Below, piece after piece: positions 34,799 to 49,620 of a stretch of DNA of 64,000 bases (position 1 is the first letter of the stretch; each line of letters starts with the position of its first letter). A program made the position numbers and the translations under genes. The notes under the pieces were generated by a model. That model was not told the origin of the DNA. It was given only the letters and a program-made list of their open reading frames with translations, and did no database searches. This DNA is from Dimorphilus gyrociliatus (Eukaryota > Animalia > Annelida), in assembly GCA_904063045.1 (NCBI GenBank), contig CAJFCJ010000020.1, positions 1,232,916 to 1,296,915 on the forward strand. The letters run 5' to 3'.

Positions 34799-37700
34799 AT
34801 GTCTGATACTGCAACGGCATTCCTGCATATAGGAGACATTGTCTCTCTTTATGCAGAAGGGAGCTCCAGCAATGGATTTATGTCAACTCTCGGGTATGTC
34901 AAGTTTTATAATTGCGTAATCAACAGTCGCTGAAATTGTGACTTTTCGCTTGCAGATTAGTAGATGATCGATGTGTAGTACAACCAAGTAGCGGTGACTT
35001 GAATAATCCACCAAAAAAATTTAGAGGTAAAAACATTCTATTTGCTTATAAGGTTATCGATTATCAGTTATCTGTCAAATGCAGATTGCCTTTTTAAAAT
35101 ATGTCCTATGAACCGTTATTCGGCCCAAAAACAATTTTGGAAGGCCACGAAACAACATGCTCCCCATACAGACGGAACATTATTGAAGAAACTACAGGTT
35201 CGTTAAATTGTAAATTCCCCCTGGCTTTCCAAATAGCATCAATTTTATCTATAATTTAAGTAGTTTTATCTAAAACTTTGATAAGCTGTAAAGAATCGTA
35301 ACTGATGAGGAATTTCTCTTGATAAAATTTATTTGGATTTGAGAGAAATTGTATTATTAAATTATAGAAATTCATATGTCAATTAGGAACGTTGTAAATG
35401 CAACGTACAAATAGATTTAGTTATGGCAGTACTCTGTCGTAATTATGCATTAATTGATAAAATATATATAGCACTGTGGAAATTAACGTATATATATATA
35501 TTTATATAAGTATATATATTCATATTCATTTTCATAGCATGCTGCCGATTTGGAGAAGAAACAGAATGAAAATGAAAACACGAAGCTATTGGGTGATATT
35601 GTCCAGTATGGGGGTGTTATTCAGGTAGAAAATTAGCTTTTATTTACGAAATTCAATGGTCTAATTGACATTTATAATTCAGCTTCTTCACGTTAAATCA
35701 AATAAATATCTTACGGTCAACAAAAGGCTTCCGGCACTTAAGGAAAAGAATGCAATGAGGGTAATGCTTGATGCTTCTGGAAATGAGGGATCTTGGTTCT
35801 ATATTGTTCCATTCTATAAATTACGTAGTCCAGGCGATAGCGTTAGTTTAAATCGCTTTTAGAATTCAGTTTTAATCCGGGTGTGGTTTTAATATGAATC
35901 CTACAGGTTGTTGTTGGAGATAAAGTCATCTTAAATCCTGTAAATGCTGGGCAACCTTTACACGCTAGTAAAGCGGAACTAGACGATAACCCAGGTAAAT
36001 TAATTAGCAATTGGTTTGAAAAAGATTACCAAGCTTAAGATGGACAGTTGATGCGACTTAATTGTATTACATAGGTTGTCGCGAAGTAAATTCAGTACAA
36101 TGCAACACAAGCTGGAAAATTACCCTCTTTATGAATCATAAGGAAAACAACGACGACTATTTAAAAGGGGGTGACGTTGTTAGGTTATTTCACGCCGAAC
36201 AAGAAAAATTCCTCACTGGGGACGAATACAAGAAAAAGCAATATGTATTTCTTAGGACTACAGGGCGTACTTCAGCTACAGCAGCTACGTCCTCAAAAGC
36301 TCTCTGGGAGGTAGAAGTTGTTCAATTAGATCCTTGTAGAGGAGGTGCCGGACAATGGAAGTCGTTGTTCAGGTTTAAGCATTTGGCAACTGGTCAATAT
36401 TTGGCAGCGGAGGTAAATAAAGAGAATGAATCTTGAAACTTTTTGGATATCTCTTATTTCTTATTGAAGAAATCTCATAAAATATTTACAATTACAGGTG
36501 GATAACGACGAAACACCAGATATTATGCGTTCAAAGCTAAAGGCTGGTTTCCAAGTACTTCATCTAGTATGCGTTCCCCACGGTAATGATCCAGCTTCTG
36601 TCTTCGAATTAGATCCTACAACAATGACAAAGCAAGAAAACTTTGTACCAAGGTTTGTACTTTCCACTAAAGATTTATAACCTTTTATAAATGCAAAAAA
36701 AAGATGCCATCGCAATAGGTTCTGCAGTGTAAACTGCGTCGTCTAATGATGATTTTTCAGACAATGTCACGTTCGTTTACGGCACTACGAAACGGAGCTA
36801 TGGGTCCACAGCACTAATTTGCAATTGCATTATCATTTCGATATAAATCAGGACGGCGACAGAGCATGTTATAAGGTTATTGGTCATTTGGCTTATGAAC
36901 ATTTTTTTTAAAAGAATTCTGTAGAACCTGTTGCTGTGGGCTTCTTTTTCGTTAATTACTTTTCAACACTGCTTTCGATTAGCATGATTTTTTTTAATTC
37001 TACTTTTTAAATAATCAAAAAAAAAACAACGATTGGCAGTTTATAATATTACTAACTGTTTGCAATTGCGGTGCTGCTTGTTTTTTTTACGCAGATCGTC
37101 CTTCGTAAGGCTTAGACATTTGTTCACGAATACGTGGGTACATTCCACGTCGATTCCGATTGATAAAGAAGAGGAAAAACCTATTATGAGTAAGGTAGTA
37201 ACTAATTTTTCTTCACTCTGTAACTACTAATTGCTTGTAGCTTATTAATTCTCATTCCATAATATGATTTTTATAGCGTTAATATTTTGCTGGATTTTAA
37301 GTCTATATCTATTTAAATAGGATCTAATGCAAAATTAATATTATGAAATAACATCTAACACAGATTGACTTTAAATCCAGTTTTTTACGTATTGTCTATT
37401 CTATATTTAAGGTGGTAATATAATATTGCAAACATTATAGCTTGGATGTGCTAGAACGAAAGAAGACAAGGAAGCTTTTGCAATTGTTCCCGTTTCCCCT
37501 CAAGAAGTAAGGGATTTAGATTTTGCAAATGACGCTTCGAAAGTTTTGCAAGCAGCTGCTAATGAGTTGGATAGGGGGAATTTAAATCAAACTCAACGTC
37601 GTTTAATTGAACAATTGCTGAGAGAAATAATATGCTTTGTGGCCCTATTGGATACACAATCAACGGTTGATCCATTAGAAGTTGTGATCATTAAACCTGA

Positions 37701-40700
37701 CAGGGAACGCCCAAAGCTATTGAGAGAACAAAATGTTTTGAAGCAACTTTTTAGGATTCTTCAAGCTCCATTTCAGGGTGATAATCCACAATTTCGTTTA
37801 GAAGATTTAAAAGGAAATAAACACGCTGGCTATAAATATATATGTAAATTATGCTATCGAATACTTAAACTATCACAACAAAGTTATCGAAAAAATCAGG
37901 AATATATCGCAAAACATTTCGCCTTTATGCAAAAGCAGATTGGTTATGACATCTTAGCAGAAGATACAATAACCGCCTTGTTACATAACAACAGAAAATT
38001 ACTAGAAAAACATATAAATGAATCAGAAATAGAAACTTTTGTAAGCTTAGTTAGGGAAAATGGAGAATCTAGGTAAATTATCAACTATTAATCTTTTTTT
38101 TTCTTTTTTAAATTAACTGTTTAAGATAATTAGCTTTAATGATAAATATTTTTTTAAAGAGCTAATTATTTTATATCTCTTTTCATTTTAAAATAAATTT
38201 AGATTTCTTGATTACCTATCGGATTTGTGCGTCTCCAACAATGTAGCCATTGCTCGTACACAAGAATTAATTTGCAAGTCAGTCTTGTGTCCAAAAAATC
38301 AGGACATTTTAATAAATACGAGGTAAGAAATGTTCTCGAAAAGAGAGATTAGTTATTTTAAGTATTTTATACATTGTAGGAATTTAACTATAAATGTATA
38401 CCGTATATATATATTTATATATGTTCTTCTGTTGCAGCTGTGCTAGAGAAAAAACCGAAATTTTGCAAACTGAATATGAGAATGGTGTTGAAAAAAGAGT
38501 ATTTGAGTCAGAAGGAAAAATTGAACAAATTTATATAAAGATTACGAATAGGGAAGATCCCACTGGACCGAGAACAAATCTATTGCTACATGAAGTTGCT
38601 GATGTTGTGAAAGGTGGCATTTTAAGATATCCGAATACATTCGAAAAGCAAAAGAAGCTATTAGATTATTATCAGTGAGTTAAAGATATATGCACTATAT
38701 ACATATATACAGTATACACTGTATATTTTATTTTGTCTTGTTTTTTATACATTTATAAATATATAAATCTAATCTATACAGGCATCAGCTAGACTTGTTC
38801 GCCAATATGTGTATGGATCGTCAGTACCTGGCTATAAATAATATTCAATTTAAAATCGAATTAATGCTAAGGTAAAAATCCTTTTTATACTTTTAAGAGG
38901 CATTAATATTTAAAAAAAAACGAAACAAATAGATGTATTGCTGATGAAGAGTTCCCGGATGACTTACGAGCTTCGTTTTGCCGTCTATTCATTCATATGC
39001 ACGTTGACAGAGATCCACAAGAGACTGTTACCCCAGTTAAATATGCACGTCTTTGGGATGATATTCCGACAACTATATCAATTGACAATTATGAAAAAGG
39101 TAAAGCTAAAGAGAAATGTGAAGAACGAAAGAAATTTCAAAAAACAATTAAATTCGTTGAGGAATATTTGACAAACGTTGCTGTGTCTGCAAAATCTTTA
39201 TCAAGTATGGACAGTGGCAATAATTCTTTAACTTTAGAAGTTGTAAAATTAGCTAGACATCTTATATATTTTGGATTCTACTCTTTTAATGAATTATTAA
39301 ATTTAACAAAAACACTTCTTTCAATTTTGGATTGCGTAACTAATAGTACTGCTCCTACTGCTCAAGTTGATGTTAATTCCTTAGCTATGATGAAACCTGG
39401 TTTACATAATATAGCTAGTGTACTAGCTCAAGCGCAAAAAACGGTTCAGAAATCTGACGAAGAAGACGTTATTGTAATGAATACTAAACTGAAAATAATA
39501 GAGATCCTACAGGTGAGTATCATAAATACAATTATTAGGACATATTTCAATAAGTTTTTAGGAAAGACGCATATTTTCAAATAAGTTATTGACAGTTTAT
39601 TATGGATGTGAGGAAGGATTATCGCATCACGTGCGTCTTATCAATATTTAAAAAAGAATTCGACGCCAATGCAATGCAATCTGCAGGTTAAAAAAATTAG
39701 AAGCGCTACTAGATTTATTAACACTATTCTTAAAAAACACGCTAATCTAAATTTTTACTAATCTGCTTAATACGATATTTTCATTGATTTTATTTATAAA
39801 AAAAAACAAAACACTATTCATGTATACGCACTAGGTTTAAAAAAAAGAAGTCAGTAATCAAACAGATAGTATAAAGTGGAAAAAAAAAGAAAAATTGTAT
39901 TAGTTAATTGTATTAATAATCTTTTGTTCTTGAATGAAAAATCTTTTTCTTTTTTTTTTTTAAAACACATCAAAACGTAAAATTGCTACAGTTTATATTG
40001 AATGTTCGATTGGACTTTCGAATTTCCTGTATTCTATCGGTCTTCAAACGAGATCACCGAGCCGGAAACGGTGAGAGGAGGATATTTTCAGTTCATTTCG
40101 TTTCCATTTTTTCCTGCACGTTTAAAAAAAAAACGGCATGTCTGCACGTATACCTTTTTTCTCATACAATAGAAAAAAATTTATTTTTATTCCTTGGAGA
40201 AAACAGGAATAAATGGGTCATGTCTGAAAATAAATCTAAAAGGGACGAGAGATTATCTAAGGAATAATAATTCTAAAAAGTCCTTTTTATATTTAAAATA
40301 GAAAACATTAGTTGCTTATTGTGCCTTTTTCTCTTTATATGATTAGCCTTATACAAGTATATTAATGAGTATAAGCATGTAGATATTATATTTATATAAT
40401 TTCTACATGTCTCTATAATTTACAATTTAATGTATATAGAGTGGTAAAGAGCTCTTATGTTGATTTATCTTATATCCATCTATCAATCTATTGTGCTGTC
40501 TTTGCACAGATATATATATATATATAACTGTATTATATATTAATATATATATATATATATATATATACAGTATACTGTATATATAACTACAGTATATATC
40601 TACATATATAATATACCTTATATCTATAATAATAATAATTCACCTTATACCCTTACATGTTTATACCTTAAACAAATTATTTAAATATCCGTATTTTATT

Positions 40701-48200: not shown

Positions 48201-49620
48201 TATTAAACATTTAAAGCTACGCTCCTTAAACAATAACGTTTATTTACCATGCCTAATATATTTTTATTTATATTATATTTAACTAATTCATACTAATCGG
48301 AATATTAAAAATTTTGGAAACGGTTTTAGGAACCTCTCTTTATAGCTCGTATTATTTATGATCTCCTCTTCTTCTTCATCGTCATTATTATCGTTCTAAA
48401 TTTGATTTTTGGAGTTATCATCGATACGTTTGCCGACTTAAGAAGTGAAAAGCAAAATAAAGAAGAAATATTAAAGAATACATGCTTCGTTTGCGGTTAT
48501 TATTAAGATATCGTCGTATTCTGCACGGATAATTCTTTTGTTTAGCTGTTTTATCCGTTTTAAAAAGCAATCATAGTCAATAGATTGTCATTAGATCTAC
48601 TTTATGTAGTTCAAACGTTAACCTTTTTTAATGGCAATAATTGAGAGTTTTTCTACCTTTTTTTTAAAAAAAAAAGGATGTACTTACCCAGCCACGCATC
48701 TATTCTACTCACCTAAACGATTGTCTACTTTCATTAATCTTGTTTTTTTTTGGTTTTTGAATGTTGTATTATTTTAGGAATCCCTCTTCATATTCCGAGT
48801 TATCTACGATCTTCTCTTCTATTTTATATTAATCATCATCGTTCTCAACCTTATCTTTGGAGTGATCATCGATACGTTTGCCGATTTGAGAACAGAGAAG
48901 CAGAATAAAGAAGAAATTCTTAAGAATACTTGTTTTATTTGTGGTTTGTTTTAGTTTGTAGTAATTTTTTTTTGCTTGTAGTTAATTTATTGTTGTGTAA
49001 ATTAATAATTATTAAAGAAAGAACACATTCCTTTGTAACCCTCTTATAATAATTTTTTCTCTTTTAAGGAAATCGTTAAGCAATTATTTTTTTAAGCGGA
49101 TATCCTTTTGGTTTTTATTCATTTAACAGGTTTGGATCGTTCATCATTCGATAATAAGTCGATTTCTTTCGAGGAACATTGTAAATCGGAACATAACATG
49201 TGGCACTATTTGTACTTCATTGTTTTGATTAAAGTAAAAGATCCAACCGAGTATACTGGACCAGAGAGTTTTGTGCACTCTATGATAGCCGAAAAGAATC
49301 TAGATTGGTTTCCACGCATGCGTGCCATGTCATTAGCGGCAGATGAAGGTGAATCAGAGCAAAATGAGTTGAGAAATTTACAAACAGCATTGGACGACAC
49401 TAAAGATTTAGTAAAACAGCTTTGCTCTCAACTGAACGAACTGAAAGATCAGGTAAGATGATTTTCTTTTGAAAAAGTTGTAAAAGTTAATATATAATTT
49501 ACTGATTGATTAATTGAATAGATGATGGAACAAAGAAAGCAGAAGCAGAGGTTTAATCTTATGCAGCCATCAATGAATCCTCTTTTGCCTACCCCAAACA
49601 CTTTAGATAACGCGCAATAA
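34799..49620 (+). CDS. ITPR: Inositol 1,4,5-trisphosphate receptor, about 27 constitutive exon positions plus multiple alternative exons
   Basis: [21 protein letters not shown] start; FLRTTGR and QSYRKNQE ligand motifs; RIH domains; [10 protein letters not shown] selectivity filter; [14 protein letters not shown] gate helix; TCF[VI]CG...HCKSEHNMW zinc finger; TAA at 49618-49620. Confidence 0.98.
36761..36875 (+). other. ITPR mutually exclusive exon 1A (115 nt): [39 protein letters not shown]
   Basis: TTTCAG acceptor, AAG|GTTATT donor, phase 2 to 0 like 1B; homologous VRLRH...WVHST. Confidence 0.85.
37095..37194 (+). other. ITPR mutually exclusive exon 1B (100 nt): [34 protein letters not shown]
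   Basis: ACGCAG acceptor, AAG|GTAGTA donor; canonical IP3R sequence. Confidence 0.93.
39596..39686 (+). other. ITPR mutually exclusive exon 2A (91 nt): [30 protein letters not shown]
   Basis: GACAG acceptor, G|GTTAAA donor, phase 0 to 1. Confidence 0.85.
39992..40070 (+). other. ITPR mutually exclusive exon 2B (79 nt): [26 protein letters not shown]
   Basis: CTACAG acceptor, G|GTGAGA donor, phase 0 to 1. Confidence 0.88.
42701..42754 (+). other. ITPR alternative exon 3B (54 nt): [18 protein letters not shown]
   Basis: AATTAG acceptor, GTTAGT donor; homologous to and the same length as the last 54 nt (41975-42028) of the upstream exon. Confidence 0.7.
44816..44848 (+). other. ITPR 33-nt cassette microexon [11 protein letters not shown] at the SII-equivalent position
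   Basis: Polypyrimidine...CATAG acceptor, GCG|GTGAGA donor, in frame phase 0, between DYGEK and GEALRQ. Confidence 0.75.
45195..45233. repeat. (TA)n microsatellite in an ITPR intron
   Basis: About 19 TA units. Confidence 0.95.
48330..48495 (+). other. ITPR mutually exclusive pore exon 4A (166 nt): [55 protein letters not shown]
   Basis: TTTTAG acceptor, G|GTTATT donor, phase 0 to 1. Confidence 0.93.
48778..48943 (+). other. ITPR mutually exclusive pore exon 4B (166 nt): [55 protein letters not shown]
   Basis: TTTTAG acceptor, G|GTTTGT donor, same length and phase as 4A. Confidence 0.93.

What the first reader, a model, noticed from the sequence alone, without database searches (positions are those of the whole stretch)
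36761..37194. Alternative exon pair in the IP3-binding beta-trefoil, with one strongly diverged version
Exon 1B is the canonical [26 protein letters not shown]. Exon 1A keeps VRLRH and WVHST but replaces the acidic DKEEEKP loop with a 5-residue-longer His-rich loop ([17 protein letters not shown]). This lies in the beta half of the IP3-binding core (established domain layout), so it could alter ligand affinity, coupling or partner binding (inference).
Basis: partly seen in the sequence, partly recalled or inferred. Interest (0 to 1): 0.74.

Follow-up and report, generated by a model that had tools for sequence, protein, structure and literature searches.

The report
Alternative exon pair in IP3 receptor
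A small marine worm's IP3-receptor calcium-channel gene carries two swappable copies of one exon in its ligand-binding head. The spare copy keeps the fold but has a different, longer surface loop, and RNA of a close relative shows it spliced in, so this is a new but ordinary example of mutually exclusive splicing whose effect on the channel is untested.

Summary
Exon 1A (36761-36875, 115 nt) and exon 1B (37095-37194, 100 nt) are tandem homologues (11/19 identical, E=1e-7). Both have AG/GT sites and the same phase. Exactly one must be used: both together, or neither, gives an early stop.

1B is the canonical exon. It corresponds to rat IP3R1 residues 385-417 in beta-trefoil 2 and is 82-94% identical to other spiralian receptors. 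1A keeps the two beta-strands and 7 of 8 (near-)invariant residues. It replaces a 9-residue acidic loop with a longer His/Asp-rich one.

RNA contigs of the same organism and of relatives use 1B. In one related organism the 1A donor is joined, GT..AG, to the downstream exon at about a third of that junction's depth. The upstream exon-to-1A junction was not seen.

Five differences in 1A between relatives are four synonymous changes plus Tyr to Phe (P=0.005), which points to selection on its reading frame. No second copy exists in a brachiopod, a bryozoan, a moth or unnamed metagenome animals, nor in annotated nemertean or mollusc isoforms. Other annelids were not tested.

No IP3-contacting residue lies in the exon. 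The nearest known site is the Ca-I(LBD) calcium site (D426).

Verdict: probably a real, lineage-restricted, minor alternative exon; functional effect unknown. First readers noted this same stretch before, and many such pairs are noted in this genome.

The parts
36498..36652 (+). Upstream constitutive exon (155 nt). It ends in phase 2 with 'AG', and the first base of 1A or 1B completes an Arg codon.
   Evidence: Spliced contigs of X1, X3 and X5 join 36412|36498. X3 and X5 also join 36652|37095. Sequence.
36697..36727 (+). 5' arm of an intronic inverted repeat that brackets exon 1A. Its core is a 16-bp stem, 36712-36727.
   Evidence: the repeat finder I1: 31 nt, 74% complementary. Paired in both the MFE and the centroid fold of the 442-nt intron. 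Duplex energy -44.3 against shuffles -35.7+-4.4, with 19 of 500 shuffles as good.
36742..36747 (+). Candidate branch point for the 1A acceptor (TCTAAT). It lies only 14 nt from the AG and is followed by a short pyrimidine tract.
   Evidence: Read from the sequence; inference.
36761..36875 (+). Exon 1A, the diverged alternative copy (115 nt, 38 codons plus 1 base). Its donor is the weak GTTATT.
   Evidence: Its donor is joined to 37441 in run X1. Substitutions against relatives are 4 synonymous plus Y to F.
36919..36949 (+). 3' arm of the inverted repeat that brackets exon 1A (core 36919-36934).
37050..37056 (+). Candidate branch point for the 1B acceptor (TACTAAC). It lies 39 nt from the AG and is followed by a long T-tract.
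   Evidence: Read from the sequence; inference.
37095..37194 (+). Exon 1B, the canonical copy (100 nt, 33 codons plus 1 base), equivalent to rat IP3R1 residues 385-417. Its donor is GTAGTA.
   Evidence: Spliced on both sides in X3 and X5, and to the downstream exon in X1 and X4. It is 82-94% identical to spiralian orthologues.
37441..38072 (+). Downstream constitutive exon (starts [13 protein letters not shown]). It holds the Ca-I(LBD) acidic loop equivalent and the start of the RIH domain with the IP3-binding Arg/Lys helix.
   Evidence: Joints 37194|37441 and 36875|37441. Pfam RIH, E=3e-45.

Best explanation
Exons 1A and 1B are a mutually exclusive alternative exon pair in the single IP3-receptor gene of this animal. 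An earlier scan note names the animal as the annelid Dimorphilus gyrociliatus; I did not verify that.

Splicing (frame logic shown; regulation inferred). Each exon alone keeps the reading frame. Including both, or neither, gives a premature stop, so only single-exon mRNAs are productive. This is exclusivity enforced by frame, and presumably by NMD. It is not steric, because the 1A donor lies about 180 nt from the 1B branch point. 1B is the default: it has a TACTAAC branch point, a long T-tract, a better donor, and is the only form in most contigs. 1A is the minor, regulated choice. It has weak sites and sits inside a loop closed by an intronic stem (36697-36727 paired with 36919-36949) that would hide it. 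I infer that opening this stem, or an activator, lets 1A be used.

Protein (structure placement shown; effect inferred). Both exons encode the third MIR-type hairpin of beta-trefoil 2. 1A keeps the two strands and the residues that are invariant across animal IP3Rs. It replaces the 9-residue acidic loop (IDKEEEKPI) with a loop about 5 residues longer ([13 protein letters not shown]), then rejoins the next strand. No IP3-contacting residue is changed. The loop sits one strand before the acidic loop that holds the Ca-I(LBD) site (D426, shared with D180 of the neighbouring subunit). My best guess is therefore that the swap tunes Ca2+ inhibition, inter-subunit coupling or a partner contact at the top of the channel, rather than IP3 chemistry itself.

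1A arose by tandem duplication of 1B within the annelid, or a narrower, lineage.
For: - Homology, phase and splice sites of the two exons.
- Frame logic: upstream+A+downstream and upstream+B+downstream are open; both exons give a stop at local codon 96; neither gives a stop at codon 74.
- RNA for 1B: in X3 and X5 (X5 matches the window at 100%, X3 at 90-95%) long spliced contigs join the upstream exon to 1B to the downstream exon.
- RNA for 1A: in X1 a contig joins 36875|37441 with GT..AG ends at depth 14.3, against 26.3 for 37194|37441 and about 50 for constitutive exons. No 1A-to-1B joint is listed. The neighbouring introns 36413-36497 and 37195-37440 have essentially no depth, so the 1A signal is not genomic DNA.
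- Selection on 1A: five differences from organisms A/B are 4 synonymous plus Tyr to Phe; P(>=4 of 5 synonymous)=0.0046.
- An in-frame TGA at 36750-36752 means 1A can only be translated in this frame if its predicted acceptor is used.
- Fold-critical residues: a 22-sequence alignment gives R, L, H, W, H, S, D, K as (near-)invariant in this exon, and 1A keeps 7 of the 8.
- AlphaFold model of the orthologous beta-trefoil (pLDDT 83 overall, 92-95 in this part): strand FVRLRH, turn, strand TWVHSTSIP, loop IDKEEDKPI, strand MSKVGCA. The conserved part of 1A is the strands and the replaced part is the loop.
- Stem bracketing 1A.
- The intron between 1A and 1B differs from the relative at about 3-4% of sites plus indels, against 13% at third codon positions of the neighbouring exon (15 of 113). 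That fits regulatory constraint.
- Ca-I(LBD) site and IP3 contacts: PMC9663519.
Against: - The junction 36652|36761 (upstream exon into 1A) was not seen in any run. In X1, 1A is contiguous with at least 80 nt of its upstream intron (contig 36681-36875) and with the downstream intron (contig 36846-37122). Much of the 1A signal is therefore partly spliced RNA.
- 1A has no depth in X5 (the window's own organism) or in X4.
- The data are assembled contigs, which drop minor forms and give no tissue, stage or strand.
- X1 and X3 show identical differences in 1A, so there is only one independent comparison, with five substitutions.
- 1A was found nowhere outside this lineage.
- The stem is only modestly better than chance (P about 0.04), and its conservation could not be read from the truncated difference table.
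- The functional effect is entirely inferred. The 1A-containing domain was not modelled.
Confidence: 0.68

Rival explanations
1. 1A is a decaying exon duplicate (pseudo-exon). Its donor is occasionally used as splicing noise, and no 1A protein is made.
For: No upstream-to-1A junction was seen. 1A is absent from the main contigs of X3, X4 and X5. The second half of 1A resembles no known IP3R. It is absent from all other phyla examined. It has a weak donor and a short pyrimidine tract.
Against: The frame is open (P about 0.05 by chance). Four of five substitutions against relatives are synonymous and the fifth is Tyr to Phe (P=0.005). Seven of 8 (near-)invariant fold residues are kept while the loop is replaced; uniform decay would not give that pattern. 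The 1A-to-downstream joint carries about a third of the junction depth in X1.
Confidence: 0.15
2. 1A works at the RNA level only. It would be part of retained-intron or otherwise unproductive transcripts that lower the amount of productive IP3R mRNA, or of a transcript that starts inside the intron.
For: In X1, 1A is contiguous with both flanking introns at depth 17-21, while other introns have none. The contig with 1A stops about 25 nt downstream of the upstream donor and does not reach the exon. An in-frame TGA lies at 36750-36752.
Against: An RNA-only role does not explain codon-level conservation of the 1A frame, nor retention of the fold-critical residues. 1A has no in-frame ATG, so an internal start would not use it as coding sequence. 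No 1A-to-1B joint, the poison-exon form, is listed. In X3 the unspliced contig does run from the upstream exon into 1A, which looks like plain pre-mRNA.
Confidence: 0.12
3. The second copy is an assembly artefact or a strain-specific duplication with no general meaning.
For: None specific. Tandem duplicates can be assembly errors.
Against: Independent runs from two other coded organisms (X1, X3) contain 1A with its flanking introns at 93-96% identity. The two copies are far too diverged (11/19 identical in the best stretch) to be a recent misassembly.
Confidence: 0.02

Closest known systems
SI splice region of vertebrate IP3R1 (ITPR1)
   Same: Alternative splicing inside the beta-trefoil half of the IP3-binding core of an IP3 receptor. 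It changes a surface segment without touching the IP3-contacting residues. The 'SI splice region' is named in PMC3685217; its position at residues 318-332 is from my own knowledge.
   Different: SI is a cassette (present or absent) about 55 residues further N-terminal. In this gene that position is an ordinary intron boundary (36412|36498). The present case is a swap of two homologous exons at residues 385-417. It was not found in any vertebrate-type locus or isoform examined.
Mutually exclusive exons a/b of insect ryanodine receptors (SPRY2 domain)
   Same: The sister family of giant Ca2+-release channels. A pair of homologous exons of about 33 residues is swapped within a cytosolic beta-rich domain. 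The copies are strongly diverged (13 of 33 residues differ) and usage is stage- and tissue-regulated (PMC3342285).
   Different: A different gene family and domain (SPRY2, not the ligand-binding trefoil). The insect pair is conserved across insects and both forms were cloned as cDNA. Here the pair is lineage-restricted and the 1A form is only half documented in RNA.
RNA-structure-guided mutually exclusive splicing (Dscam1 and similar clusters)
   Same: Intronic base-pairing is proposed to decide which tandem exon is used (PMC3535345 and PMC7430681, listed). Here a stem flanking 1A is predicted in both the MFE and centroid folds.
   Different: Dscam uses docking and selector sites competing among many exons. 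Here a single stem would loop out one of two exons. It is only marginally better than shuffled controls (19 of 500) and has no tested covariation.

Membership tests
Inositol 1,4,5-trisphosphate receptor (gene level) | N-terminal MIR/beta-trefoil domains followed by RIH domains, with high similarity to solved IP3R structures | tested here: met
   Pfam MIR E=7e-36 on exon 36074-36412 and RIH E=3e-45 on exon 37441-38070. 1B matches IP3R1 residues 385-417 with E=2e-14 and also matches IP3R2 and IP3R3 chains. The best database relatives are IP3Rs.
Mutually exclusive exon pair | Two adjacent exons that are homologous, with the same phase and similar length | tested here: met
   115 and 100 nt, both 1 mod 3. 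BLASTP E=1e-7. Both match the same Pfam MIR positions.
Mutually exclusive exon pair | Functional splice sites on both copies | tested here: inconclusive
   AG/GT is present on both. Both sites of 1B and the donor of 1A are seen used in RNA contigs. The acceptor of 1A was not seen used.
Mutually exclusive exon pair | Each exon alone gives a productive mRNA; both or neither do not | tested here: met
   Local frame check: A alone and B alone are open; both give a stop at codon 96; neither gives a stop at codon 74.
Mutually exclusive exon pair | Transcripts contain one or the other exon, never both | tested here: inconclusive
   Upstream-1B-downstream is seen in full. 1A-to-downstream, skipping 1B, is seen in X1. 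No 1A-to-1B joint is listed. However, contigs cannot show absence, and an unspliced 1A-intron-1B contig exists.
Conserved (ancient) alternative exon pair | The same pair at the orthologous position in other phyla | tested here: not met
   A single copy in Lingula (L025), Bugula (L001), Operophtera (L004) and metagenome animal loci L006-L024. All annotated isoforms of Lineus and Liolophura, plus Argonauta, Tubulanus and bivalves, carry only the canonical form. Other annelids were not available.

The most novel reading that the evidence does not exclude
1A gives the channel a splice-selectable metal- or Ca2+-sensitive loop. Its His/Asp-rich insert contains D-I-N-Q-D-G, a DxDxDG-like calcium-loop pattern. 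It sits one strand before the acidic loop of the inhibitory Ca-I(LBD) site, at the contact between beta-trefoil 2 and the neighbouring subunit's beta-trefoil 1. One IP3R gene could then make channels with different Ca2+-inhibition set-points, or with pH or Zn2+ sensitivity, in different cells.
Probability: 0.1. Interest if true: 0.6.

Novelty: new member of a known kind. Interest (0 to 1): 0.38.

Why it matters
Most invertebrates have a single IP3R gene. Splicing is therefore their only route to the channel diversity that vertebrates get from three genes plus the SI, SII and SIII splice sites.

I found no published case of homologous exons being swapped inside the IP3-binding core. If 1A is translated, it is a natural experiment. 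The trefoil scaffold is held constant while one surface loop next to the inter-subunit Ca2+ site is replaced, which could show what that loop does.

The case is limited in reach. The exon seems confined to this worm's lineage, 1A is a minor form, and duplicated alternative exons are noted many times in this genome.

Tried and rejected
- **1A as a protein query.** I corrected it to a contiguous 40-aa genomic reference, 36759-36878. That found no candidate of 22-70 aa. This says nothing about longer proteins.
- **Word search with the 210-aa downstream exon.** The best hit was only 66% identical, so no fragments of close relatives turned up.
- **Whole-library search with the same exon.** All 37 cluster representatives that cover the region carry the canonical acidic loop. 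Representatives hide isoforms.
- **Priapulus locus L002.** The region is a run of N, so it is uninformative.
- **Lineus and Liolophura genomic loci.** Not on record.
- **A cephalopod transcript (P0410) that differs inside this exon.** It looked like a second exon version, but it is simply another species, with 91 scattered substitutions.
- **A nematode-type longer loop (P0037, P0142) as a possible relative of the 1A loop.** No significant similarity.
- **Single-sequence fold of the orthologous trefoil.** Failed at pLDDT 32; repeated successfully with an alignment.
- **Steric and U12-type explanations of exclusivity.** Rejected from the sequence: the 179-nt donor-to-branch distance is too long for steric exclusion, and all sites are GT-AG of the U2 type.
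- **Paper searches.** No description of mutually exclusive exons in an IP3R.
- **Vertebrate-type material.** Loci L007, L017, L018 and L022-L024, and proteins P0002, P0121 and P0122, were not pursued once recognised. The human ITPR1 entries listed were never fetched.

Full report
**What is there**

The window holds an IP3-receptor gene on the + strand. Around the finding the exon chain is 36498-36652, then one of 36761-36875 (1A) or 37095-37194 (1B), then 37441-38072. The upstream exon ends with two bases of a codon. The first base of either alternative exon completes an Arg.

- 1A translates to [38 protein letters not shown].
- 1B translates to [33 protein letters not shown].
- Both are flanked by AG and GT, and both have length 1 mod 3.
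- They are homologous: 11/19 identical, E=1e-7.
- A tblastx self-comparison of the gene finds this pair as one of only three genuine tandem exon duplicates.
- Both hit the same part of the Pfam MIR profile. 1B scores above the curated cut-off and 1A below it.

**Where it lies in the protein**

1B aligns to residues 385-417 of rat/mouse IP3R1 in the crystal and cryo-EM entries, with E=2e-14. 1A aligns only over residues 387-406, with E=0.02. Beta-trefoil 2 spans W226-V435 (PMC9663519).

I aligned this domain from 22 invertebrate and protist IP3Rs and predicted its structure (pLDDT 83 overall, 92-95 in this part). The exon encodes, in order:

- a strand (FVRLRH)
- a turn
- a strand (TWVHSTSIP)
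- a 9-residue acidic loop
- the start of the next strand

1A keeps both strands and 7 of the 8 invariant or nearly invariant residues of the exon. The one it lacks is the loop Asp. It replaces the loop with one about five residues longer, carrying two His and three Asp.

The residues that contact IP3 (T267, R269, S274, R504, K508, R511, Y567, R568, K569) lie outside the exon. The Ca-I(LBD) site residue D426, which binds Ca2+ together with D180 of the neighbouring subunit, lies nine residues after the exon's end, in the next loop.

**Is it spliced?**

A local frame check shows that either exon alone keeps the frame open. Both together give a stop 96 codons into the local model, and neither gives a stop at codon 74. 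That script printed only stop positions, and no joined sequence went to any search or fold tool.

Public runs were laid on 36000-38100. All are assembled contigs.

- **X5** matches the window at 100%. It holds a 5.2-kb spliced contig using 1B.
- **X3** (a related organism, 90-95% alike) holds a 7-kb spliced contig using 1B. It also has a low-depth unspliced contig running from the upstream exon into 1A.
- **X4** (a coral metatranscriptome, over 99% alike) shows 1B joined to the downstream exon.
- **X1** (a related organism) shows the upstream exon joined to 1B, and 1B joined to the downstream exon at depth 26.3. It also has a contig joining 36875 to 37441 with GT..AG ends at depth 14.3. That is the predicted 1A donor spliced to the downstream exon, skipping 1B.

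The neighbouring introns 36413-36497 and 37195-37440 have essentially no depth in X1, so this is RNA and not contaminating DNA.

Against this, no contig shows the upstream exon joined to 1A. In X1, 1A is also contiguous with part of its upstream intron (36681-36875) and with the intron towards 1B (36846-37122). Much of the signal is therefore incompletely spliced RNA.

**Selection**

Organisms A and B differ from the window at five positions in 1A. Four changes are synonymous and one turns Tyr into Phe. With 18% of possible changes in this exon being synonymous, four or more of five has P=0.0046.

A TGA stands in frame three codons before the exon (36750-36752), and 1A has no in-frame ATG. Selection on this frame therefore implies use of the predicted acceptor.

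This is one independent comparison, because X1 and X3 share the same five changes.

The intron between 1A and 1B differs by only about 3-4% plus a few indels. Third codon positions of the neighbouring exon differ by 13% (15 of 113, all 15 differences at third positions). Such conservation is typical of introns next to regulated exons.

**How the choice may be made**

- 1B has a TACTAAC branch site 39 nt from its AG, a long T-tract and a GTAGTA donor.
- 1A has a CTAAT 14 nt from its AG, a short tract and a GTTATT donor.
- An inverted repeat (36697-36727 and 36919-36949, with a 16-bp core including two G:U pairs) brackets 1A. It is paired in both the MFE and centroid folds of the intron (z=-2.2).
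- The best duplex between the two introns flanking 1A beats all but 19 of 500 dinucleotide shuffles. The introns flanking 1B show nothing of the kind.

This fits a default of 1B, with 1A looped out unless the stem is opened. The signal is modest and untested.

**Distribution**

- The tail of 1A has no relative among about 270 fetched IP3R sequences.
- None of 37 cluster representatives has anything but the canonical loop.
- Genomic loci with a single copy: Lingula anatina, Bugula neritina, where the exon is fused to the upstream one, Operophtera brumata, and the unnamed metagenome animals whose contigs reach this region.
- All five annotated Lineus isoforms, both Liolophura isoforms, and the Argonauta, Tubulanus, bivalve and cephalopod transcript sequences carry only the canonical form.
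- 1B is 82-94% identical to these sequences.

So 1B is ancestral and 1A is a lineage-restricted duplicate. Other annelids could not be reached with the tools.

Other notes list many duplicated alternative exons in this genome.

**Literature**

I found no paper describing mutually exclusive exons in an IP3R. The nearest precedents are:

- the SI cassette of vertebrate IP3R1, in the same domain
- the mutually exclusive a/b exons of insect ryanodine receptors (PMC3342285)

**Verdict**

This is a real tandem exon pair and very probably mutually exclusive. 1B is the main form and 1A a minor, selected, lineage-restricted form whose inclusion is half documented. The effect on the channel is unknown. 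I favour tuning of Ca2+ or inter-subunit coupling at the trefoil ring over a change in IP3 contacts.

**Rule-bound omissions and handling**

- Vertebrate-type loci and proteins that turned up were not followed.
- The human ITPR1 entries listed were never fetched.

Noticed in passing
window 39593-39667 / 39989-40063 and 48324-48521 / 48772-48969: The same gene has two further tandem exon duplicates. The second pair, in the pore and last transmembrane region, is 82% identical at protein level over 66 residues. Both were already noted by first readers.
   Followed up: partly
window 36876-37094: The intron between 1A and 1B differs from the related organism at only about 3-4% of sites plus four small indels. 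Third codon positions of the neighbouring constitutive exon differ at 13%. The intron looks constrained.
   Followed up: partly
L004:16230-16322 (Operophtera brumata, protein P0130): The deposited moth gene model skips most of the canonical exon (it reads ...VPQSSY|LGCSQIKEDKEAF), although the exon is present in the genome. This is probably an annotation error.
   Followed up: no
L002 (Priapulus caudatus, protein P0041): The partial gene model lacks this exon. The genomic interval between the flanking exons holds 3,144 N, so the exon is probably lost in an assembly gap.
   Followed up: no
window 36653-36680: Run X3 carries small insertions at 36678-36679, and both X1 and X3 have a 2-nt deletion at 36695. 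The X1 contig that holds 1A ends just here, so a polymorphic indel may have broken the assembly graph and hidden what lies upstream of 1A in that run.
   Followed up: no
window 36833-36850 (within exon 1A): The new loop contains D-I-N-Q-D-G, which fits the short DxDxDG-type calcium-loop pattern at positions 1, 3, 5 and 6. Later EF-hand positions do not fit. A motif this short can easily be chance.
   Followed up: no
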